64,000 nucleotides of DNA, taken from the NCBI RefSeq assembly GCF_016432865.1, contig NC_067402.1, positions 71,734,001 through 71,798,000 of the forward strand. The letters are read 5' to 3'. A program made the position numbers and the translations under genes. The first letter of the stretch is position 1. Every line of letters starts with the position of its first letter. Below, one piece after another: positions 2,471 to 63,690 of the stretch. The notes beneath the pieces are model-generated. The model made no database searches and had not been told where the DNA came from. It worked only from the letters and a program-made list of their open reading frames with translations. Source of the DNA: Antechinus flavipes (Eukaryota).

Positions 2471-4114
2471 TACACATATATGTGTTGATATACAATATAA
2501 ATATAAGTAGGCACATATTATATATGCATATATAATATACTAATGCATAATATAGACATGTAAAAATTAGATATAAATATTTGTATAATTAAATAATTCT
2601 TTATAAAGATAGTAATGGCTAATCCTGAGTTTGACTTTATTTTTTATTGATATTTATATTTTCCTAGAAATCTAACACATATTTGCTTAAAAGAACTGTT
2701 CCAAAAAATGCATGTGATATATGTGCTTGCATGTATATATACATAATTTTCATATATGGAGTCTCTTCTACCTCCTTCTATTCTTTTTCCTCTTTCGCTT
2801 TCTCTCTTCCCATCATAAGAATGCATTTTATGTGTATATACATGTATATATACATGTAGTATATACATCTCTACTTTGCATATATCTATGAGTCAACCGC
2901 ATATAGATGAAGTTGAATTTTTGGGAGGAAATTATATTTTCTAGGAAATCAAGAAGTAGATAAAGCCTTGAAGGAGAGATACCTACAATAGGTGAGTGGA
3001 AGATGGATGATTAAACAATTAAAATTAAGAAAGTGTGGTTGGACAAAGAGAAAGAAACCTGTGAAAGAGTAGTGCTGAGAAAACTGAGAGAATAAGTCAT
3101 ATCACAGCAAAAACTGCAAAGGTCAAAAAAAAATTAAGGACTGAAAAAAGGTTCTTAGATTAGTAATAAAGAAGAAAAACTAGATTTTGTTTTTTTAAAG
3201 TCATATTAACATAGATATTTCCCATGTTTGACTCCTTCATGTTTAAAAGACTATAAGTTTCCAAGTATTCTTGAAGCAAAAGAAGGAAGTTCCCTAAAGA
3301 TAATTATTATGGGACTCATTTATTAGCTTCTTGTTGCAAAACTTACATTTCTCTCATTAATATTATGATTTAACCCATTACCTCTTTTCCTCTTGATTCT
3401 CATTTTGTTTGACTAATCAAAGCATGTAAATAAACAGTTAATTTTAATAAATTTGTCATGATATGCAGAAAATTACAATTTCTTTTTTAAAATGCTCGGT
3501 AATATGCCAAGCAATAGAAAATATTTATTTGTTCTCCATTTTATTATATTAAAAGGTTACAGATCTTCAGGTTTATACTTTATAGACCATAGGGACATAT
3601 AAGTTTAGAAAGATCTGGATCTAGTGTAGTAGATCTAGAAAGTAAGTTCAGAGACTTGTGCAACATATATAGAGAGAAGTATCCTCTATGTAGCTATATA
3701 AATATAATTAAACTCACTTCCCTTGCTTCTGCTCACTGGGTCCCTACTCTGCTTCAGAACCCCATCTCCCTCTCATTTGGTCCCACTCTAGGAGCCTTCT
3801 AATTATTTTCCCATGGCTAGTTTCTTTCTTTCTTTCTTTTTTTTTTTTTTTTTCAGATATAGGCTGCTGAATTTATATGGCTAATTCGCTGAAAAGTACA
3901 AATAAGTATCCAATATGATCAGTCATATATATTTGAAGTCACACTATTGGAAGTTATCATCATATGTTGATTCCAGTCCAGTGGAGTTATACCATGTGAA
4001 TATTTAAATATGGAGTGGGCATTTTTTGTGATTTAGATTATTTATTTTTATTTTAAATATATATTGTTTTATGAATTATTTTTGGAGAGAAAACTCAAAG
4101 CAAAAAGGAAAAAC

Positions 4115-4273
4115 NNNNNNNNNNNNNNNNNNNNNNNNNNNNNNNNNNNNNNNNNNNNNNNNNNNNNNNNNNNNNNNNNNNNNNNNNNNNNNNNNNNNNN
4201 NNNNNNNNNNNNNNNNNNNNNNNNNNNNNNNNNNNNNNNNNNNNNNNNNNNNNNNNNNNNNNNNNNNNNNNNN
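4115..4273. other. Assembly gap (159 N)
   Basis: N run inside an L1 3' region. Confidence 1.
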
Positions 4274-4582
4274 CCAAAGTCTATTGGGATTGCTTTGAAG
4301 CAATGGACTACTGAAAAGAGCCAAACCTTTCACAGTTGATCAACGCACATTTTTGTTGTTATTTTGTACAATGTATTCCTGATTCTGCCTTTTTAGCTCA
4401 ATATCAGTTTATATCAACTTTCCACGCCTTTCTATAATCAGCTTGTTCATCATTATAATAGAACAATAATATACCATTACCTTCATATACCATAACTCAT
4501 TCAGCCATTCCCGAACTGATGGACATCTACTCATTTTCCATTTCTTTGCTACCACAAAATTTGCTACTACAAATATTTTTGC

Positions 4583-4754
4583 ACAGATAGGCATCTAGAT
4601 TATATTCTAAATGGAATCATTGAAGTTTCAGGAGCTGTATACTGATATGGTCACATAGGTTTTAAAAATACTGCAACCAAAGAAGAACTAGAAAACATTA
4701 TGAAAGGCAAAATGGACAACTTAGATTACATTAAATTTAAAATGTTTTTGCACA
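4583..4754. repeat. Arm 1 of 172-bp inverted repeat
   Basis: reverse complement of 5383-5554 with one mismatch (checked base by base). Confidence 0.97.
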
Positions 4755-4998
4755 CTTATGGTTTCCTTGGGATATAGACCCAATAATGGCACTGTTGGGT
4801 CAAAGGGTATGCACAGATTTATAGTCCTTTGAGAATAGTATCAGATTGCAGATGGTTGGAATATTTCATAATTCCTCTAAAAATGCATTAGTATCCCAGT
4901 TTTCCCACATCATCTCTAACATATCATTTTAGTCAATCTGAGAAGTATGAGGTGGAGTTGTTTTAATGTGCATTTCTCTAATTAAGAGTGAATTAGAG

Positions 4999-5144
4999 GA
5001 GCAGCTAAGTGGTATGGTAGATAGAGCACTAGTCCTAAAGTCAGGAGGACCTTATTTCAAATCTGGTCTCAAGACACTTCACACACCCTAGCTGTGTGAC
5101 TCTGGGCAAGTCACTTAACCCCAATTGCCTCAAGGGGGGAAAGA
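4999..5144 (+). mobile_element. Short tRNA-derived marsupial SINE (WSINE1/SINE1-like) inserted in L1
   Basis: gagcagctaagtggtatggtagatagagc...ttcaaatc...gggcaagtcacttaaccccaattgcctc; 15-bp TSD aagagtga(a/t)ttagag at 4984-4998 and 5145-5159. Confidence 0.85.
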
Positions 5145-5382
5145 AAGAGTGATTTAGAGCATTTTTTCATATATCTACAAATGGCTTTAATTTAACTATC
5201 TGAAAATTGTCTGTTCACATACTTTGACCATTTATCAGTTGGAGAATTATGTGCATTCTTATAAATGTGACATAGTTCTTTATATATTTTAGAAATGAAA
5301 TCTTTACCAGAAATACTGGCTGTAAAGATTTTTTTCTCCAGCTTTATACTTCCCTTTTAATCTTGTTTCTATTGGTTTTGTT

Positions 5383-5554
5383 TGTGCAAAAACATTTTAA
5401 ATTTAATGTAATCTAAGTTGTCCATTTTGCCTTTCATAATGTTTTCTAGTTCTTCTTTGGTTGCAGTATTTTTAAAACCTATGTGACCATATCAGTATAC
5501 AGCTCCTGAAACTTCAATGATTCCATTTAGAATATGATCTAGATGCCTATCTGT
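5383..5554. repeat. Arm 2 of 172-bp inverted repeat (78 bp L1 + 94 bp flank)
   Basis: reverse complement of 4583-4754. Confidence 0.97.
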
Positions 5555-5944: not shown

Positions 5945-6195
5945 GGTAGACAGTACATGAAGTACTAACTAGTCTTGGAGTCAAGAAGAACTAAGTTAGA
6001 ATCTTACCTCAAAAAACTAGCTGTGAGACCCTGAAAAATTATTAACATGTGCTAGGCTTTCAGGTTCCTCATTTATAAAATTAGGATCATAATAATACTT
6101 ACTTTACAGGATTGTTGTAAGAATCAAATGAGATAATGTATGAAAAACACTTTGTAGATTCTGAAAGACTAAACAACTGCCAGTTATTATCATTT
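5945..6195 (+). mobile_element. MIR
   Basis: ggagtcaagaagaac...ctagctgtgagaccctg...cctcatttataaaat...caggattgttgtaagaatcaaatgagataatg. Confidence 0.75.
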
Positions 6196-6240
6196 TAGCC
6201 ATCATCTTCATCCTTATCACCATCTTCACTTATTTTTAAA

Positions 6241-6497
6241 TGGGGCAGCTAAGTAGTACAGTGAATAAAGTGCCAGTTTGAAGAGGAAGACTTTAATTTT
6301 TTTTTTTTTTTTGTCAATTCAAATCTAGCCTCAGATTCTTACTAGCTGTGTGGCCCTAGACAAGGCATTCACTTCTGTTTGCCTCAGCTTTCTCATCTGT
6401 ATATTGATCTTATGAAGGAAATGGCAAACCACCTTAGTAATATTTGCTAAGAAAACCCCAAAAAGGTGAGACATGACAGAATATGACAAACAACAAA
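6241..6497 (+). mobile_element. MAR1-type CORE-SINE with RTE/Bov-A-like tail
   Basis: ggggcagctaagtagtacagtg head, core, tail gaaggaaatggcaaaccac...gctaagaaaacccc. Confidence 0.8.
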
Positions 6498-10809: not shown

Positions 10810-11390
10810 GGATCTTGGCAGTTGGTCCCATCATTTCCTGGAGAATGAATGAAAAAGAAATGGAAGCAATATTATATTATTGGTATCAAAAATCAATGTC
10901 AACAGAGATACACCTATGAAATTAAAAAAAAAAAAAAAAACTACTTGCCCTTTGGAAGGAAAACTATGGCAAATCTGAACAGAGTACTAAAAAGCAGAAA
11001 CATCACTTTACTGAGAAGGGTCCAAAGAGTCATAGGATTTTCCAGCTGCATTTATGACTGTGAGAGTAGGACTAGATGGAAAACTGAATACTGGAGAATT
11101 GGATTGTTGTGCTGTAAAAGATTTTTGAGAGTCCCTTGGATAGCAAGGAGGTCAAATCAGTCAGTATTAAATAAATTAGTTCAGATTGGATAGATACCAC
11201 TGAATGATCAAATAATAGAGCTGAAGCTTAAATACTTAAATACTTTGGCTATATATTGAGAAGATGGGATTCATTAAAAGACCATAATGTTGGGAAAGAT
11301 TAAACGCAAAAGGAAAAGGGGATGGCAGAAGATTAAATGGATAGATAGTGTCATGGAGAAATGAACACGAGCTTGAACAGATTTCAGGAA
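10810..11390 (+). mobile_element. BovB-type RTE LINE, degraded ORF2 C-terminal fragment
   Basis: ggtcccatcatttcctgg, ttggaaggaaaactatggcaaatct, gagagtcccttggatagcaaggaggtcaaatcagtc, gctgaagct...atactttggc, gttgggaaagatt follow the BovB consensus as I recall it; ORF track gives LPFGRKTMANLNRVLKSRNITL and RVPWIARRSNQSVL. Confidence 0.85.
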
Positions 11391-12030: not shown

Positions 12031-12542
12031 AATATAATAGCTTCTTATTTACAAGATAGGTCAATGGGTAATTTTTTAGCATTGACCCTTGCAAAACCTA
12101 TTCCAACTTTTCTTCTCCTTCCCCTCCCCCCCTCCCCTAGATGGCAGGTAGACCAATACATGTTAAATATGTTAAAGTATATGTTAAAACCATTATATGT
12201 ATACATATCCATACAGTTATTTTGTTGCACAAGAAAAATCAGACTTAGAAATAGGTAAAAATAACCTGAGAAGGAAATCAAAAATGCAAGTGGACAAAAA
12301 CAGAAGGTGTAGAAATGCTATGAAATGGTTCATACTCAATTCCCACAGTGCTTTCGCTGGGTGTAGCTGGTTCTCTTCATTATTGAACAAATGGAACTGA
12401 TTTGGTTCATCTCATTGTTTAAGACAGCCACGTCCATCAGAATTGGTCTTCATATAGTATTGTTGTTGAGGTGTGTAATGATCTCCTGGTCCTGCTTATT
12501 TCGCTCAGCATCAGTTCATGTAAGTCTCTCCAAGGCCTCTGC
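12031..12542 (-). mobile_element. Young marsupial L1 3' UTR fragment
   Basis: cccctagatggcaggtagaccaatacatgttaaatatg...cctgcttatttcgctcagcatcagttcatgtaagtc. Confidence 0.9.
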
Positions 12543-12591
12543 TAATTCAAAACTATCGTCTCTCCAAGGCCTCTGCTAATTCAAAACTATC
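12524..12591. repeat. Perfect 34-bp tandem duplication at L1 5' junction
   Basis: gtctctccaaggcctctgctaattcaaaactatc x2 (12524-12557, 12558-12591). Confidence 0.97.
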
Positions 12592-14772: not shown

Positions 14773-15470
14773 AAAAGATAATGACAAATATTAAAGGGGA
14801 TGTGGGAAAACTGGGACATTAATGTGTTGTTGGTGGAGTTATAAAATGATACAACCATTTTGGAATAGCAATCTGAAACTATGCTCAAACGGCTATAAAA
14901 CTGTCAATATCCTTTGACCCAACAGTACCATTATTGGGTCTGTATCCCAAGGAAATCATAAAAGAGGGAAAAGGACCTACATGTACAAAAAGGTTTATAG
15001 CGGCACTTTTTGTGGTGGCAAAGAATTTGAAAATAAGTAGATGCTGATCAATTACGGAATGGCAGAACAAGTTGTGGATTAGGGATTATTATTGTTCTAT
15101 AAAAAATGATGAACAAACTGGCATTAGAAAAATCTGGAAAGATTTACATGAACTGATGCTGAGAGAAACAAGAAGAACAGGGATACATTTTACACAATAA
15201 CAGCAAGAATGTGCAAAGATCAACTATGAAAGACTTAGTTCTTCTTAGCGGGTCAGTGATTCAAAGCAATCCCAATAGACTGGACAGAAAATGCCATCTG
15301 TATCCAGAAAAAGAAATAAGGAGACTGAATGTAAATCAACACATGCTAAGTTCTCCTCTTTTTTCTGTTTTTTTTTTTAAATCACTCCCATGATTTTTCC
15401 CTTTTGCTTCAATTTTTCTTTCCCACCATGATTCATAAAGCAATAGGTATTAAAAATAAATAAATTTACT
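14773..15470 (+). mobile_element. 5'-truncated marsupial L1 (ORF2 end + 3' UTR)
   Basis: ggaaaagataatgac...gggtctgtatcccaagg...ttacatgaactgatgctgag...aataaataaa. Confidence 0.9.
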
Positions 15471-18792: not shown

Positions 18793-18969
18793 NNNNNNNN
18801 NNNNNNNNNNNNNNNNNNNNNNNNNNNNNNNNNNNNNNNNNNNNNNNNNNNNNNNNNNNNNNNNNNNNNNNNNNNNNNNNNNNNNNNNNNNNNNNNNNNN
18901 NNNNNNNNNNNNNNNNNNNNNNNNNNNNNNNNNNNNNNNNNNNNNNNNNNNNNNNNNNNNNNNNNNNNN
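18793..18969. other. Assembly gap (177 N)
   Basis: N run next to CT-rich simple repeat. Confidence 1.
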
Positions 18970-27302: not shown

Positions 27303-28084
27303 AAATGACATAATCCAAGTTAACCCAATTAACTTCATCTAGTAGCCACTAATTACTACTTAATTCTACTTGAGTATTTGTGATTGTCAGAGCTCTAGTC
27401 TGCACAAAAAAGGAAACCCTTGAGGAATTTATATTATGTTGGAGATGAAGATGGAAGGAAGTAGGTAAGGAAGTAACTTACTGAGATTAGGGTAGATCAA
27501 ATCTTTCTATCATATACTTTTAAATTACATATGACCATACCAAATAGTATAGATTTTATACTGCATTTATATATCTTAAACAACATTTCTCTACATCCAT
27601 CTTGTATTAAGGTATATCATAAAAATTACAAGAATATATAAATGATGCTGTGAAATGTAAACCTTATCAATTTAGTGAAAAGGAACAATACAACTTAATC
27701 TGTTCTACTCTTAAATATTGAGGCTCCTTTTCCTTTGGGCCACTTTGTATTAAGGAATAGTTTACACAAAGAGACTGCCTCCTATTTCCTTCATTATATA
27801 ACATACATAGATGGGCATATACATATAGTAGTTTCTCCATTATACTTTATGGTTTTAACATTTCTCCTATGGAGAATGTAAACATATGTCTATATTCATA
27901 ATTTAGTGATTTCTCTTCTTGCAGAATGCAATAAACCTGACTATATGAGGTCGTGATATGAATTTCTTTCTACAGAATATAAAATACTTCCCTTCCCATT
28001 GGTTTAGCAGGCACATGATAAGTACTTGATAACATTTGTTGACCTGCCTTTTTCTAGAATATATCTAAAATTATAGATATCTTG

Positions 28085-28320
28085 GCATAGTAAGGAGGAA
28101 AACTTGATTTCAAGTCAGGAAAGACTTGAATTGGAATGCCACTTCTGATGTCAACTTAGGTATCCATGTCTCAACTTCTCAGAGTTTCAGTTTCTTCATC
28201 TGTAATATGGGGATATTCCTATCTCCTCCTAGAGCTTAGAGGGTCAATTGACATAATAATTGCAAAGTGCTTTGCAAACCCAAAAAGTGTTATCCAGATG
28301 CTAGCTATCATTATTGTATA
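28085..28320 (+). mobile_element. MIR
   Basis: aagtcaggaaagacttgaatt...tcagtttcttcatctgtaatatgggg...gcaaagtgctttgcaaacc. Confidence 0.7.
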
Positions 28321-31790: not shown

Positions 31791-32434
31791 AGAGCATTGT
31801 TCCCTTCACAAAAGTACCATCAGGAGGTAACCCTTCAAACATCTCTTAGTCATCACTAATATAAAGTGAATTTCCTATGCTGAAATCAAGTTTTATTTCG
31901 GGGGAATAAGGTGAAAGAGTGCAAGGAAACATCTGCGTGGGTGTTGGGTTCCTATGCCAAGTTTTAGAGTGCTACAGACCAACCTTCTTTAGGACCAATC
32001 TAAAGAAGTCAGTGATAGGTAAATACCAAGCATAAATGAATATTTTTTTCCATCGCTATTCCCATTGGATGTACCTGTACTGATTGCAGTGGAATAAAAA
32101 GTTAAGCTAGGAGAAGTACCTATTTTTCCCTTCTCAGGGGAGAGTGATTATTTCATGGCATTTTCTGTATGTTGGCTCATTTTCATGAATTTTGGATTAA
32201 TCTCTTTCTGTGTGTCTCTGTCTTTTTCAATGTCACTCATAACATTTCCAAAATCCTAATATCTTAATTTTACATGCCAGAGATCTTCCCCTGTAACTTA
32301 TTTCTGCTCTCTTCTTTTTCCTTTTTCCAGATCCTAGGTGTACACATGCATTCTGTCTCTCTTTGTCTCTGTCCCTGTCTCCTTACTATGCCAAGATATC
32401 TATAATTTTAGATATATTCTAGAAAAAGGCAGGT

Positions 32435-32436
<2 letters not shown>

Positions 32437-32488
<52 letters not shown>
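32437..32488. repeat. (GA)n microsatellite
   Basis: direct. Confidence 0.98.
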
Positions 32489-36323: not shown

Positions 36324-37014
36324 TTTTTTTAAACCTTTTTATTTTCAAAACATGCACAAATAATTTGACAACATTGACCTTTTCATAGCCTTATGTTTTA
36401 GATTTTCTCCTCCTTCCTCTCATCCCTTCCCCTAGATGGCAAGCAATCCAATATATGTTAAACATATTAAAATATATGTTAAATCCAATAAGTATAAACA
36501 TATTTATACAGTTCTCTTGCTGCACAAGAAAAATCTGATCATAAAAAGAAATTAAATGAGTAAATAAACAAAATGCAGGTGAACAACAACAAAAAGGGTG
36601 ATAATATTATGTTATGTTCCACAATCAGTTCCCACAATTCTCTCTCTGGCTACAGATAGCTCTTTTCATCACAAGATTATTGGAACTGGCATCAGTCATC
36701 TCATTGTTGGAAAGAGTCATGTTCATCAGAATTGATTGTGTATGATATTGATGTTGTCATGTACAATAATATCCTGTTTCTTCTCATTTCACTTCACATC
36801 AGCTCATGAATGTTTCGCCAGGCCTTTCTAAAATCATCCTGCTGGTCATTTCTTATAGAACAATAATATTCCATAGCATTCATATACCATAACTTATTCA
36901 GCCATTCTACAACTGATGAGCATTTGCTCAGTCTCCAGTTTTTGCCACTACTAAAAAAGGCTGCCACAAACATTTTTGCCCATGTGGGTCTCTTTTCCTC
37001 CTTTAAGATCTCTT
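36324..37014 (-). mobile_element. 5'-truncated marsupial L1 with 16-bp TSD
   Basis: poly-T start, cccctagatggcaag, gaacaataatattccatagcattcatatacc; TSD ggat(a/g)caaattattct at 36308-36323 and 37015-37030. Confidence 0.9.
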
Positions 37015-40270: not shown

Positions 40271-40465
40271 NNNNNNNNNNNNNNNNNNNNNNNNNNNNNN
40301 NNNNNNNNNNNNNNNNNNNNNNNNNNNNNNNNNNNNNNNNNNNNNNNNNNNNNNNNNNNNNNNNNNNNNNNNNNNNNNNNNNNNNNNNNNNNNNNNNNNN
40401 NNNNNNNNNNNNNNNNNNNNNNNNNNNNNNNNNNNNNNNNNNNNNNNNNNNNNNNNNNNNNNNNN
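40271..40465. other. Assembly gap (195 N)
   Basis: N run. Confidence 1.
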
Positions 40466-40504: not shown

Positions 40505-40640
40505 TTAGTGGGTAGTTGGGGTTAAGTAACTTGCCCAGAGTCATATAGCTAGCGGATGTTAAGTGTTTGAAGCCAGATTTGAACTCAGTTCCTCCTGAGA
40601 GGTGCATGCTCTATCCACTATGTCATCTAGCTTACCCCTC
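40505..40640 (-). mobile_element. Short marsupial SINE (WSINE1/SINE1-like)
   Basis: ggggttaagtaacttgcccagagtcatatagctag...ccagatttgaactcag...ctctatccactatgtcatctagc. Confidence 0.8.
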
Positions 40641-50589: not shown

Positions 50590-51150
50590 TCTTCTTTCTT
50601 TCTATCTCTGTCTGCCTCTCNNNNNNNNNNNNNNNNNNNNNNNNNNNNNNNNNNNNNNNNNNNNNNNNNNNNNNNNNNNNNNNNNNNNNNNNNNNNNNNN
50701 NNNNNNNNNNNNNNNNNNNNNNNNNNNNNNNNNNNNNNNNNNNNNNNNNNNNNNNNNCTCTCTCCATTTCCTTTTTAACTCCTTCCTTCCTTTCCTTCTC
50801 CCTTCCCTCCTTCCTTTTTTCCTTCCCTTCTTCCCTCTCTTGCCTTCTTCCTCCCTTCCCTTCTTCCCTCTTTTCTTCTTTTCTATCCCTTCCTCCACAC
50901 TGCCTTCTTCCCCTTCCCTCCTTCCTTCCTTCACTCCTCCCTTTTTTCTTCCTCCCTTCCTTCTTTCCCTATCTTTCTTCTCTCCTTCCTTTTCTCCATC
51001 CCTCCTTCTCTCCTCCCTTCTCTTCCCCTCCTTCCTTCCTTTCTTCCCTACTTCTCTCCTTTCCTGTCTCTTTCCTTTCATTCCTTTCTCCCTTTCTTCT
51101 TCTCTCTCTCCCTTCCCTTCCTCCCTTCCTTATTTTTCTTCTTCTGTCTT
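50590..51150. repeat. Long polypyrimidine (CT/CCTT) low-complexity tract
   Basis: almost only C/T on + strand; includes gap. Confidence 0.95.
50621..50757. other. Assembly gap (137 N)
   Basis: N run inside a polypyrimidine tract. Confidence 1.
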
Positions 51151-54867: not shown

Positions 54868-54985
54868 ATCTTGCATCATATATATATTATGTAATATATA
54901 TCATATGCATGCTACATATACATATAATCTTGCATCATATATGTGTTATATAATATATATCATATGCATGTTACATATACATATA
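54868..54985. repeat. 59-bp tandem duplication within RY-rich tract
   Basis: atcttgcatcatat...tcatatgcatg(c/t)tacatatacatata x2. Confidence 0.9.
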
Positions 54986-55899: not shown

Positions 55900-56145
55900 T
55901 GTGTTGTTCACTTGTGTCTAGGTCTCAGTGATCCCATTTGGGTTTTTTTTGGCAGAGATACTGAAGTAGTTTGCCATTTCCTTCTTCAGCTATTTTTATA
56001 GATGAGGACATTGGAAGTAAACAGGGTTAAGTGATTTGTCCAGAGTTACACAGCTAGTAAGTGAGAAGTCAGATTTGAACTCAGGAAGATGAGCCTTCTT
56101 GACTAATTTCTGGCACACAACACAATCAACCTAGCTGGCCTATTG
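55900..56145 (-). mobile_element. MAR1-type SINE
   Basis: ttggcagagatactgaagtagtttgccatttccttcttcagc...cagatttgaactcaggaagatgag. Confidence 0.85.
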
Positions 56146-60094: not shown

Positions 60095-63000
60095 AGAATA
60101 TATTTATCTCCCCTCTCAGAATCAGACAAATCCAACCACAAAATAAGCAAGAAAGAAATTAGAGAGGTTAATAGAATCTTAGAAAACCTAGATGTGTTAA
60201 ATTTCTTGGGAAAATTGAATAGGGACAGTTAAGAATATACTTTTTTTCTCGACAGTACATGGCACTTACACAAAAACTGATCATGTATTAGGGCATAAAA
60301 ACTTCACAATAAAATAAAGAAAGGCTGATATAGTAAATGCTTCCTTTGTAGACCATGATACAATAAAAATTAAATAAAGAGCCAGAGAAGTAGACTAAAA
60401 ACTAAATAAAATTACAAATTAATTAATCTACAATTAGATTAATTATTTAGGAAATTAAATGATCTAATTCTAAAGAATGAGTGGATCAAACAACAAATCA
60501 CAGAAACAATCCATAATTTCATTCAAGAGAATGAAAATGATGAAACAACATACTAAAACCTAAGGAATGTAGCCAAAGCAGTTTTTAGGCAAATTTTATC
60601 TCTTTAAATAGCTACATGAATAAAATAGAGAGAGAGGAGAGAGGAGAAAAAAGAGAGAAGAGAAGAGAGAGAGATACCAAAATAGAAATTCCAAAACTCA
60701 AAGGTGAGATTAATTGAAACTAAGAAAGCTATTGAAGTAACTGAAAAAACTAAGAGTTGGTTTTATGAAATAGCCCACAGAATAGACAAATCTTTGGTTA
60801 ATTTGATAAGAAAAAGGAAAGGGAAAAAAAAAAAGCAAAAAAAACAAAAAAAAAAAACAAATCACCAGCATCAAAAATTTAAAAAGTGCACTTACCTCAA
60901 GTGAAAAAAGAAATTTAAGCAATAATTAGGAGCTATTTTGCATATCTGTATGACAACATATCTGACAATCTAACCAAAATGGATGAATATTTACAAAATT
61001 ATCAATTGCCCAGATTAACAGAAGAGGAAACGAAAAACTTGAATAGTCCCATTTTAGAAAAAGAAAGTGAACAAGACCATCAATGAAATTTCCAAGAAAA
61101 AAAATTTTCCAGGGCCAGATGGATTCACAAGTGAATTGTATCAAACATTTAAAGACCAATTAGTACCAATACAATGCAAACTATATGGAAAAATAGGTAA
61201 AGAAGGAGTCCTGCCAAATTCCTTCTATGATACAAATATGCTATTCAAACCTAAACCATGAAGAACCAAAACAGAGAAAGAAAATTACAGACCAATGAAT
61301 ACTGATGCAAAAGTTTTAAATAAAATAATAGCAATTACAGACCAATGAATATTGATGCAAAAATTTTAAATAAAATAAAAGCAAAGACATTATCACAGTT
61401 TATCAGGAGCATAATACACTATGACCAAATGGGATTTATACCAGGAATTCAGGGCTACTTCAATATCAGGAAAACTATTACTATAATTGACCATATCAAT
61501 AACAAAATCAACAGAAATCATATAATAATCTTAGTAAATGCTGAAAAAAGAATTTGACAAAATACAGCATCCATTCCTATTAAAAATACTAGCAAGCATA
61601 GTGATAATGGGAGCTTTCCTTAAAATAATAAGTAGTATCTATCTAAAACCAAAATCAAGCATTATTTGTAATGGACAGATGCCAGATGCATTCCCATAAA
61701 GATCAGGGATGAAACAAGGATGGCCATTATTACTACTATTGTTCAACAGTGTACTATAGATGTTGGCTTCAGCAATAAGAAAATAAAAAGAAATAAAAGG
61801 AATTAGAATAGGTAATGAGGATATAAAATATCATTCAGCAGATAATATGCTAATATTCTTAGAGAATTCTAGCAAAACATTCAAAAACTTATTTGAAACA
61901 GCTTCAGCAAAATTATAGAATGTAAAATAAAGAAACACAATCAACAGCATTTCTATATATTATTGCCAAAGCACAGCAGCAAGAGATACAATGAGAAATT
62001 CCATCTACACTAAGTGTAGACAAAATATTTGGTTGTCTACCTGCTAAGACAAATCCAGAAACTATATGAACACAATTACATAACACTTCAGTGTTATGTC
62101 AAATAAAGCCAGATCCAAATAATAGGAAAAGTATCAATTGTTCATGATTAGGCTAAGCTAATATAATAAAAGATGACAATTCTGCCTAAATTGGTCTATT
62201 TGTTCAGTGCCATGTCAATCAAAATACTAAAATTATTTTATAGAACTAGAAAAATAATTACAAAATTCATTTGGAAGAAGAAAATATCAAGAAAATTATA
62301 GGAATTAATGAAAAAATACAAAAGATAGTGACTTAGCAATACCACATCTAAAACTATATTATAAAGCAGCAGTCATTGAAATAATTTGGTAATGGCTAAG
62401 AAATATAATGGTCCATCAGTGGAGTAGGTTAGATACTCATGACACAATAATCAATACCTATAGCAATCTAATATTTGCTAAATGCCCAAATTGTAACTTG
62501 TGAGTTAAGAACTATTTGACAAAAATTGCTGGAAAAACTGGAAAACAATATGTCAGAAACTCAGTAGAGACCTACATCTCACACCCCATAGCAAAATAAG
62601 GTCAAAATAGCAAAAGGTCATCTTTTATAACGTGATTTGGACATAAAGAATGATACCATAAACAAATGAGGATTGCAAGGGGATAATTTACTTACCAGTT
62701 CTTTGGAGAAGAGAGGAATTTATGACCAAAGAAGAACTAGCAAATATTACAAAAGGCAAAATGGGCAACTTTGATTACATTAACCTAAAAAAAGATTTTA
62801 TACAAACAAAACCAACAGAAACAGATTAAAAGGAAAATACAAAGTTGGGAAAATTTATATCCAGTGTTTCTGTTAAAGGTCTCATTTCTAAAATATATAA
62901 AGAATGGTGTCAAATTTGTAAGACTACAAGTCATTTCATAATTGATTAATGGTCAAAGAATACAAATAGACAATTTTCAGATGACAAAATTAAAGTTATC

Positions 63001-63690
63001 TAAAGTCATATGAAAACAATGTTCTAGATCACTAGTGGTTAGAAAAATGCAAAGTAAAACAACTCTGAAGTACCACCTCACACCTCTCAGATAGGCTAAA
63101 ATGATAGGAAAAGATAATGATAAATGTTCGAGAATATTTGTAACAATGTATTACTAATGTAATACTAATGTGATGTAATACTAATGTAATGCTACTACTG
63201 GGTCTGTATCCCAAAGAAATTATAAAAGAAGGAGAAGGACCCACATATGCAAAAAAGTTTGTAGCAAGTCTTTTGGGGCAGCAAAGAATTGGAAAATGAG
63301 TAAATGACCATCAATCGGGTAATGGCTGAATAATATGGAATATTAGTGTTCTTTAAAAAATGATGAAGAAGCTGATTTTTGAAAAGACTGGAAAGATTTA
63401 CATGAACTGATGCTGAGCCAAACAAGCAGAAGCAGGAATACATTGTATACAAAAGCAAAAAAAAGTGAGATGATCAACTATGAAAGCCTTGCTTCTCAGT
63501 GGTTTAGTGAGCTAAAGATCCCAGTGGACTTTGAATAGAAAATGCCATGTATATCCAGAAAAATTATGGAGATCAAATGTAAATCAACACATGATATGTT
63601 CATTCTTTTTTTCCTACTTTTTTTTGCTCTATTTATTCTAATATTTCTTTCCCAATATGACTCAAAAAGCAATGTGTATTAAAATAAATA
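60095..63690 (+). mobile_element. Large 5'-truncated marsupial L1: decayed ORF2 (late EN, RT, C-term) + 3' UTR
   Basis: ORF track: [43 protein letters not shown]; many stops and frameshifts; ends aataaataaa. Confidence 0.96.

What the first reader, a model, noticed from the sequence alone, without database searches (positions are those of the whole stretch)
4583..5554. 172-bp inverted copy of an L1 5' junction plus host flank, inserted into the same L1
Seen: 4583-4754 is the reverse complement of 5383-5554 at 171/172, with a 628-bp spacer. The source arm is 78 bp of L1 plus 94 bp of non-L1 flank beyond the truncation point. The copy sits inside the L1 3' region. It replaces about 20 bp present in the paralogue at 36980-37005 (catgtgggtctcttttcctcc). 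The entry junction has 'aca' microhomology, and tttttgcaca occurs both just before the insert and at its end. Inference: a post-insertion template switch (MMBIR/FoSTeS or Pol-theta-type repair). Standard twin priming inverts only L1 sequence and would not put the downstream flank inside the element. The arms could pair in ssDNA or RNA (ADAR substrate if transcribed).
Basis: partly seen in the sequence, partly recalled or inferred. Interest (0 to 1): 0.72.

Follow-up and report, generated by a model that had tools for sequence, protein, structure and literature searches.

The report
Backwards DNA copy inside dead L1
A 172-base stretch spanning the front end of a dead L1 jumping gene and the host DNA beside it was recently copied backwards into the same L1 about 0.8 kb away; this looks like an ordinary but unusually long and clean scar of DNA copying that jumped templates, and I could not confirm it with sequencing reads.

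Summary
Window 4583-4754 is the reverse complement of 5383-5554 at 171/172, with a 628-bp spacer. The host is a decayed L1 on the minus strand (about 4040-5460), truncated at 5460. Arm 2 (78 bp of L1 plus 94 bp of non-L1 flank) is in place, so it is the source. Arm 1 is the copy, and it replaces about 19-22 bp that three paralogous L1 copies in the window still carry.

The arms are far younger than the L1, whose paralogues are 76-83% identical to it. This excludes twin priming and any other origin at integration.

- **Outer junction:** 3-bp microhomology (aca).
- **Inner end of the copy:** it stops exactly at a 10-bp perfect (14/15) homology to the sequence just before the insertion site. The chance of this is about 7.5e-6.
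- **Inner junction:** blunt, with the small deletion.

Best reading: a two-jump template switch (pattern 1-4-3-2, MMBIR or foldback type) at a break or stall, with end-joining closure. It is a known kind of mutation, longer and longer-ranged than usual, and no function is shown.

A second perfect 59-bp inverted copy lies in the same window.

The parts
4040..5460 (-). Host element: a decayed, 5'-truncated L1-type LINE (ORF2 C-terminal region plus 3' UTR and A-rich tail). It contains the N-run, the inserted copy and a SINE.
   Evidence: The minus-strand translation shows L1 ORF2 C-terminal motifs spread over three frames, with many stops. The element is colinear with paralogues B, C and D at 76-83% identity. 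Its 3' end maps by homology to 4047-4113 against B 15460-15394. Paralogue C has an RVT_1 fragment upstream (E 1.5e-6). No clear target-site duplication was found.
4583..4754 (.). Arm 1: the inserted inverted copy. It reads flank then L1 sense on the + strand and sits inside the antisense L1.
   Evidence: It is 171/172 to the reverse complement of 5383-5554. It interrupts L1 colinearity and takes the place of about 19-22 bp present in paralogues B, C and D.
5383..5554 (.). Arm 2: the source. 5383-5460 is the 5'-most 78 bp of the truncated L1, and 5461-5554 is 94 bp of unique non-L1 flank.
   Evidence: Its L1 part is colinear with the spacer L1 across 5382/5383 in the alignment to paralogue C. 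The flank has no other match in the window.
4755..5382 (-). The 628-bp spacer: L1 ORF2 C-terminal sequence interrupted by a SINE.
4571..4585 (+). h: 'aaatAtttttgcaca', L1 antisense sequence ending at the insertion point. Its last 3 bases (4583-4585, aca) are the microhomology shared with the outer end of the source.
   Evidence: The chance of a 3-bp match or longer is about 0.02.
4740..4754 (+). h*: 'aaatGtttttgcaca', the last 15 nt of the copy. It is a 14/15 direct repeat of h, with the last 10 bases identical.
   Evidence: P about 7.5e-6 for 10 bp or more.
5383..5397 (+). H': the reverse complement of h*, at the inner end of the source. With h it formed a pre-existing 14/15 inverted repeat within the L1.
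4998..5135 (+). A SINE (tRNA-derived, MIR-like marsupial type; the name is from memory) inserted into the L1 spacer. It is not part of the event but shows that the L1 is old.
   Evidence: It is absent from paralogues at this position. Related copies lie at 6242-6386, 40516-40598 and 56024-56057.
4115..4273 (.). N-run inside the L1 3' UTR, 310 bp from arm 1. I did not fill it.

Best explanation
This is a young mutation scar that arose after the L1 integrated. Long after a 5'-truncated L1 had landed on the minus strand, DNA synthesis at a break or stalled fork inside the L1 left its template. It re-primed about 0.97 kb away on the strand of the same polarity and copied 172 nt backwards, across 94 bp of host flank and the first 78 bp of the L1. 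It then came back. In four-point notation the order is 1-4-3-2: point 1 at 4585, point 2 at 5554, point 3 at 5383, and point 4 at 4755.

**Shown**
- The copy, its orientation and its exact limits.
- The right-hand arm is the source.
- The arms are far younger than the L1.
- There is a 3-bp microhomology (aca/tgt) at the 1-to-2 jump.
- The copy ends exactly where its last 10 nt (14 of 15) equal the sequence just before point 1.
- About 19-22 bp of L1 are missing at the blunt inner junction.

**Inferred**
- The nascent + strand stalled at 4585. Judged from the paralogues, this is the centre of a CACA|TGTG palindrome.
- It switched by the 3-bp match, was extended by a low-processivity polymerase (MMBIR or Pol-delta type), and re-annealed to its original site through the 15-nt homology.
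- The template there was broken or blocked, so the end was closed to the far side by end joining, with loss of about 19 bp. Alternatively, that short deletion was already present in this L1 copy.

**Consequence**
The result is a 172-bp near-perfect inverted repeat with a 628-nt loop. It would fold as a hairpin in single-stranded DNA, or in RNA if the locus is transcribed. No function is indicated.
For: - **Repeat:** 171/172 with sharp ends.
- **Source arm:** its L1 part is colinear with the rest of the L1, and the copy interrupts that colinearity.
- **Flank:** it is unique in the window and does not match the ORF2 sequence that paralogue C carries at that position.
- **Templated from this locus:** the L1 part of the copy is 78/78 to this locus but only about 90% to the best paralogue.
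- **Age:** this L1 is 76-83% identical to its paralogues, is broken by stops and frameshifts, and carries a SINE insertion. The arms differ at 0.6%.
- **Homology:** a terminal 10-bp homology has chance probability 7.5e-6, and a 3-bp microhomology 0.02.
- **Missing bases:** the segment is present in three paralogues.
- **Hairpin:** the full 172-bp stem forms in the predicted DNA fold, with minimum free energy -262 kcal/mol.
- **Published precedents:**
  - The MMB-TI signature is an inverted nearby template with microhomology at the junctions (PMC8421209).
  - Yeast foldback inversions of 2 to about 150 bp are made by Pol-delta priming at inverted microhomology, with NHEJ capture at the other end (PMC11724301).
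  - The 1-4-3-2 pattern is one of the two commonest in great apes (PMC7954356).
- **Assembly:** earlier notes name the genome as Antechinus flavipes. Its published assembly is 100x PacBio with contig N50 51.8 Mb (PMC9290055), so a consensus-level 172-bp chimera is unlikely.
Against:
- The pre-event allele is inferred only from paralogous L1 copies, not from an orthologue.
- The inner junction has 0-1 bp of microhomology. Every model that uses the 15-nt homology predicts that the missing ~19 bp would be kept, so an extra step or an earlier deletion must be assumed.
- The tract length (172 nt) and template distance (0.63-0.97 kb) exceed the usual range for template-switch mutations. In great apes the median is 12 nt and the maximum 128 nt, and the MMBSearch tool only looks within 100 bp.
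- A second perfect inverted copy in the same 64 kb means either a high real rate or a class of artefact.
- The species and assembly identity come from unchecked notes.
Confidence: 0.7

Rival explanations
1. Assembly or polishing artefact. Arm 1 does not exist in the animal; the consensus wrongly placed an inverted copy of nearby sequence in place of about 20 bp.
For: - Only one assembly was seen, and no reads could be laid.
- An N-run lies 310 bp away.
- Two perfect or near-perfect inverted local copies lie within one 64-kb window. Many similar notes exist elsewhere in this genome, and at least one similar case there also lacked read confirmation. That frequency looks high for real germline events.
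Against: - The N-run lies inside the L1 3' UTR, and the other N-runs sit in low-complexity sequence.
- The published assembly has 1107 contigs in 3.2 Gb. Four real gaps in 64 kb are therefore implausible, and the runs are probably masks.
- A 100x long-read consensus needs most reads to carry both junctions.
- k-mer-based polishing cannot invent a junction.
- The 10-15 bp homology at the end of the copy (P about 7.5e-6) and the 3-bp microhomology are marks of polymerase annealing, not of mis-scaffolding.
Confidence: 0.17
2. Capture of a pre-formed single-stranded fragment. A 172-nt piece with the polarity of a lagging-strand (Okazaki) fragment or a displaced 5' flap from 5554 to 5383 was released. 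It annealed through its 3'-terminal 15 nt to the complementary site at 4571-4585 and was sealed into a gap or break. No continuous two-jump synthesis by one nascent strand was involved.
For: - The size is close to that of a eukaryotic Okazaki fragment (background knowledge).
- The 3' end of the fragment is exactly the 15-nt homology.
- The inner junction is blunt with a small deletion.
- Yeast mutants in flap processing (dna2, rad27) and in RPA insert such pieces at breaks (PMC11724301).
Against: - The sequence does not distinguish this from primed synthesis; both give the same product.
- It needs two independent coincidences at the fragment ends.
- It still predicts that the ~19 bp would be kept.
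- It has been demonstrated only in mutant yeast.
Confidence: 0.08
3. Made during L1 integration (a variant of twin priming, or a template jump by the L1 reverse transcriptase during second-strand synthesis), with the arms later kept alike by gene conversion.
For: The copy includes the exact 5' junction of the L1, and L1 ORF2p is known to switch templates (background knowledge).
Against: - The arms differ at 1/172, while the element is 17-24% different from its paralogues. About 30-40 differences would be expected if the arms were as old as the element.
- Arms of 172 bp separated by 628 bp are poor substrates for sustained conversion.
- Twin priming inverts L1 sequence only, without duplicating it and without flank.
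- There is no poly(A) tract and no target-site duplication around arm 1.
Confidence: 0.03

Closest known systems
Short-range template-switch mutations (four-point model; Loytynoja & Goldman 2017; Walker et al. 2021, PMC7954356)
   Same: A reverse-complement copy of nearby sequence replaces a short stretch. The point order is 1-4-3-2. A perfect inverted repeat is created in one step. A pre-existing quasi-palindrome is involved.
   Different: The tract is 172 nt, against a median of 12 and a maximum of 128 in the great-ape gold-standard set. The template lies 0.63-0.97 kb away rather than tens to hundreds of nt. The return is out of register, with loss of about 19 bp.
MMBIR/FoSTeS templated insertions (MMB-TI signature, PMC8421209)
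   Same: The insertion is inverted relative to a nearby template. There is microhomology at a junction. Synthesis looks low-processivity, with dissociation and re-annealing.
   Different: The operational definition looks for templates within 100 bp. Here one junction is blunt. This is a germline event in a marsupial rather than in cancer or yeast.
Foldback inversions at double-strand breaks in yeast (Pol-delta priming plus NHEJ capture, PMC11724301)
   Same: It is a hybrid: one junction uses microhomology and the other is blunt with loss of a few bases. An imperfect inverted microhomology of 10-15 nt sits next to the event. Tracts reach about 150 bp.
   Different: In yeast the inverted microhomology primes the synthesis, with a 41-nt loop. 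Here the 14/15 homology lies at the end of the copied tract, and the loop would be about 650 nt. The simple foldback version predicts a product that keeps the ~19 bp.
L1 twin priming (Ostertag & Kazazian 2001; from memory)
   Same: An inverted L1 segment lies inside an L1 insertion.
   Different: This contains 94 bp of non-L1 flank. It duplicates sequence rather than rearranging it. It is much younger than the element. It is not a member of this family.
Inverted-repeat-mediated DUP-TRP/INV-DUP rearrangements (Carvalho et al. 2011; PMC11293582)
   Same: A pre-existing inverted repeat guides a template switch, and a second junction is non-homologous or microhomologous.
   Different: Those events involve kilobase-scale low-copy repeats and rearrangements of kilobases to megabases with copy-number gain. 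This one is 172 bp guided by a 15-bp repeat.

Membership tests
Template-switch / MMBIR-type templated inverted insertion | The inserted tract is the reverse complement of sequence close by on the same molecule. | tested here: met
   171/172 identity, with the template 628 bp (inner) to 971 bp (outer) away.
Template-switch / MMBIR-type templated inverted insertion | Three colinear pieces (L to 1, 2 to 3, 4 to R) account for the whole difference from the pre-event sequence. | tested here: inconclusive
   This holds when paralogous L1 copies stand in for the ancestor. No orthologous pre-event allele could be fetched.
Template-switch / MMBIR-type templated inverted insertion | Microhomology at the switch points. 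| tested here: met
   There are 3 bp (aca) at the 1-to-2 jump. The copy ends in a 10/10 (14/15) homology to the site of point 1 (P 7.5e-6). The junction as finally sealed (4754/4755) has 0-1 bp.
Template-switch / MMBIR-type templated inverted insertion | The event is younger than the surrounding sequence, with the pre-event allele found in relatives or other individuals. | not testable with these tools
   Youth is shown only relative to the L1.
L1 twin priming | The inverted segment consists only of L1 sequence. | tested here: not met
   94 of the 172 bp are non-L1 flank.
L1 twin priming | The inversion is formed at integration, so it has the same age as the element, and no segment is present twice. 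| tested here: not met
   78 bp of L1 are present twice at 100% identity, while the element is 17-24% diverged from its paralogues.
Assembly chimera or gap-fill error | The junctions are not supported by reads. | not testable with these tools
Assembly chimera or gap-fill error | It sits next to a true assembly gap. | tested here: inconclusive
   The N-run lies inside the L1 3' UTR and is about the length of the homologous stretch in paralogue B (159 against 112 bp). Assembly contiguity argues that the N-runs are masks, but the identity of the assembly rests on unchecked notes.

The most novel reading that the evidence does not exclude
This genome, or this region of it, makes long templated copies of roughly Okazaki-fragment or nucleosome size (about 60-270 nt) from templates 0.6-4 kb away, at a rate far above that seen in great apes. 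The 172-nt piece here would then be a displaced lagging-strand fragment or flap that re-annealed through 15 nt of homology. That would be a germline, wild-type mammalian counterpart of the flap-capture insertions so far shown only in yeast dna2, rad27 and RPA mutants.
Probability: 0.08. Interest if true: 0.55.

Novelty: new member of a known kind. Interest (0 to 1): 0.25.

Why it matters
If real, this is a clean natural example at the long end of template-switch mutation. A single event made a 172-bp perfect hairpin-forming repeat, and both the priming microhomology and the homology that ended the copy can be read directly. It shows how a chance 15-bp inverted repeat inside a dead transposon can seed a much longer one, which could serve as raw material for double-stranded RNA or for fragile sites. 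It has no evident function and changes no concept. Its main practical value is as one data point, together with the second event in this window, for asking whether this assembly or lineage carries unusually many such copies.

Tried and rejected
- **Other assemblies.** I tried look-up of encoding contigs with small ORFs beside the stretch (3656-3799 and 6107-6229).
- **Gene context.** I looked for exons so that orthologous loci could be fetched. There are no convincing exons; the window is AT-rich (about 33% GC) and made of repeats.
- **Target-site duplication of the L1.** The best shared string is an 8-bp low-complexity match, which is not convincing.
- **Models rejected on sequence:**
  - *Snap-back priming by the 15-nt inverted repeat.* It predicts the primer variant (A) next to the spacer, but the source variant (G) is there. 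It also predicts that the ~19 bp are kept.
  - *The 10-15 bp repeat as a target-site duplication of a retro-copy.* The right-hand copy is identical to the source, and there is no poly(A).
  - *The left 3' end priming on the 5383-5392 homology.* That would copy the spacer, not the arm.
  - *A mosaic of an inversion haplotype.* There is no homology at which the consensus could switch.
- **Earlier notes.** They gave no record for this window.

Full report
**Observation**

The inverted repeat is exactly as described. The repeat finder gives arms 4583-4754 and 5383-5554, 172 nt, 99% complementary, with 628 nt between them. A direct comparison finds one mismatch (4601 T against the complement of 5536) and no extension at either end of either arm. 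A self-comparison of the whole window finds only one other young non-simple dispersed repeat, a 59-bp inverted pair. The finding is therefore not part of a repeat family.

**Anatomy**

- **Host element.** The minus strand from about 5460 down to 4274 translates into the C-terminal part of an L1-type ORF2. The reading is spread over all three frames and has many stops.
- **Paralogues.** Three copies lie in the window: B at 14799-15281, C at about 61000-63560, and D at about 36818-37000. They align at 76-83% identity. C has a reverse-transcriptase fragment upstream (RVT_1, E 1.5e-6).
- **Truncation point.** Homology to C runs without a break across 5382/5383 and stops at 5460. C continues upstream with ORF2-like sequence that the locus lacks. 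The L1 is therefore 5'-truncated at 5460, and 5461-5554 is non-L1. That flank has no other match in the window.
- **3' end.** To the left the L1 continues through the N-run: 4278 matches B 15281, and 4047-4113 matches B 15460-15394. It ends in an A-rich tail at about 4040.
- **SINE.** A SINE occupies about 4998-5135 of the spacer.
- **Target-site duplication.** No convincing one was found.

**Direction and age**

The L1 part of arm 2 is colinear with the rest of the element. Arm 1 interrupts colinearity and stands where B, C and D have about 19-22 bp of the type 'acatgtgggtccttttccctct'. Arm 2 is therefore the source and arm 1 the copy.

The L1 part of arm 1 is 78/78 to this locus but only about 90% to the best paralogue. 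It was copied from this very element, together with its unique flank.

If the duplication dated from integration, decay like that separating the paralogues (17-24% pairwise) would give roughly 30-40 differences in 172 bp. One is seen: 0.6%, with a Poisson 95% range of 0.015-3.2%. The event is much younger than the L1. This excludes twin priming or any other integration-time origin, unless one adds an implausible run of gene conversion.

**Junctions**

- **Outer (left) junction.** '...tttttgc-aca-gataggc...'. The three bases aca are shared between the L1 site (paralogues have aca, ata or cca) and the end of the source (tgt at 5552-5554). The chance of 3 bp or more is about 0.02.
- **End of the copy.** The copy ends at 5383, exactly where its last 10 nt (tttttgcaca; 14 of 15 with aaatGtttttgcaca) repeat the 15 nt just before the insertion point (aaatAtttttgcaca, 4571-4585). 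In 2,000,000 random site pairs from this window a match of 10 nt or more occurred at 7.5e-6. This homology is therefore part of the mechanism. It means that the L1 already held a 14/15 inverted repeat (4571-4585 and 5383-5397) before the event.
- **Inner (right) junction.** '...gcaca|cttatgg...'. It has 0-1 bp of microhomology and lacks the ~19 bp.
- **Inferred palindrome.** Judged from the paralogues, the pre-event site read CACA|TGTG, an 8-bp palindrome, with the break at its centre. This is an inference and is not seen in the locus itself.

**Mechanism**

The simplest account is a two-jump template switch in the order 1-4-3-2.

1. A nascent + strand ends at 4585.
2. It re-anneals by aca/tgt to the + strand at 5554 and is extended to 5383.
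3. Its new 3' end (15 nt) then matches its original template, so it returns.

Run in either direction, this model, like foldback priming on the 15-nt repeat, predicts a product that keeps the ~19 bp. Their absence therefore needs one more element. One possibility is that the template was broken or blocked at that point. That would also explain why synthesis stopped there in the first place, and the end would then have been sealed to the far side by end joining with a small loss. This is the hybrid of microhomology-primed synthesis by Pol delta plus NHEJ capture described for yeast foldback inversions of 2 to about 150 bp (PMC11724301). The other possibility is that this L1 copy had already lost those bases. 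That requires an older indel boundary to coincide with the switch point, which I put at a few percent by rough estimate.

I favour the break version. A tract of 172 nt from a template about 0.8 kb away fits MMBIR-type synthesis better than the short insertions typical of Pol theta (background knowledge).

A variant cannot be separated from this by sequence alone. In it, a free 172-nt lagging-strand fragment or flap anneals through the same 15 nt.

**Is it real?**

Indirect evidence favours a real allele.

- Earlier notes identify the genome as the yellow-footed antechinus (unchecked).
- Its published assembly is 100x PacBio (canu correction, wtdbg2) polished with Pilon, with contig N50 51.8 Mb and 1107 contigs (PMC9290055).
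- Four N-runs of 137-195 bp in 64 kb cannot then be assembly gaps. Here one lies inside an L1 3' UTR and two lie in CT-rich low-complexity sequence.
- A consensus at that depth needs most reads to carry both junctions.
- The junction homologies are marks of annealing, not of mis-joining.

One caution remains. The same window holds a second perfect inverted copy: 28039-28097 copied to 32379-32437, 59/59, 4.3 kb away, at the edge of a (GA)n microsatellite. Notes from other windows list several more. At least one similar case there (a 140-bp copy in a dead L1) could not be confirmed with reads either. This density is well above what great-ape surveys suggest for long events. Either the rate is high here or an artefact class exists. 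I put the artefact reading at about 0.17.

**Comparison and membership**

The event meets the sequence-level definition of a template-switch or MMB-TI event: an inverted copy of a nearby template with microhomology (PMC8421209; PMC7954356). It lies beyond the usual ranges. The tract is 172 nt against a median of 12 and a maximum of 128. The template is 0.63-0.97 kb away, whereas the MMBSearch tool looks within 100 bp.

It fails the defining features of L1 twin priming: it contains non-L1 sequence, it duplicates sequence, and it is young.

It resembles the large rearrangements guided by inverted repeats only in logic, not in scale.

**Consequence and verdict**

The two arms pair fully in the predicted single-strand DNA fold (minimum free energy -262 kcal/mol). 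They would also pair in RNA if the locus is transcribed. Nothing in the window indicates a gene, a promoter or transcription, and the 628-nt spacer should make the repeat fairly stable (background knowledge).

This is a known kind of mutation in an unusually long and legible form. No function is shown, and read-level confirmation is still outstanding.

Noticed in passing
window 28039-28097 and 32379-32437: A second young inverted copy: 59/59 identical, 4.28 kb apart and unique in the window. The left one is colinear with a SINE that continues at 28098, so it is the source. The copy sits between a degenerate (TC)n run and a (GA)~26 microsatellite, so the CT-rich and GA-rich tracts themselves face each other like a palindrome.
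   Followed up: partly
window 12524-12591: A perfect 34-bp tandem duplication (12524-12557 and 12558-12591) next to L1-like sequence.
   Followed up: no
window 4115-4273, 18793-18969, 40271-40465, 50621-50757: The four N-runs are 137-195 bp long. One lies inside an L1 3' UTR, and two are flanked by CT-rich low-complexity sequence. Given the reported contiguity of the assembly, they look like deliberate masks and not assembly gaps. I did not fill them.
   Followed up: partly
window about 61000-63560 (+): The longest L1 copy in the window (paralogue C). It has a reverse-transcriptase fragment at 61324-61554 (RVT_1, E 1.5e-6) and is heavily decayed.
   Followed up: partly
window 10849-11193 (+): A 114-aa ORF whose sequence recalls the C-terminal region of RTE/BovB-type LINE proteins. 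This is from memory and was not tested.
   Followed up: no
window 54868-54985: A 59-bp AT-rich tandem repeat with two copies at 93% identity.
   Followed up: no
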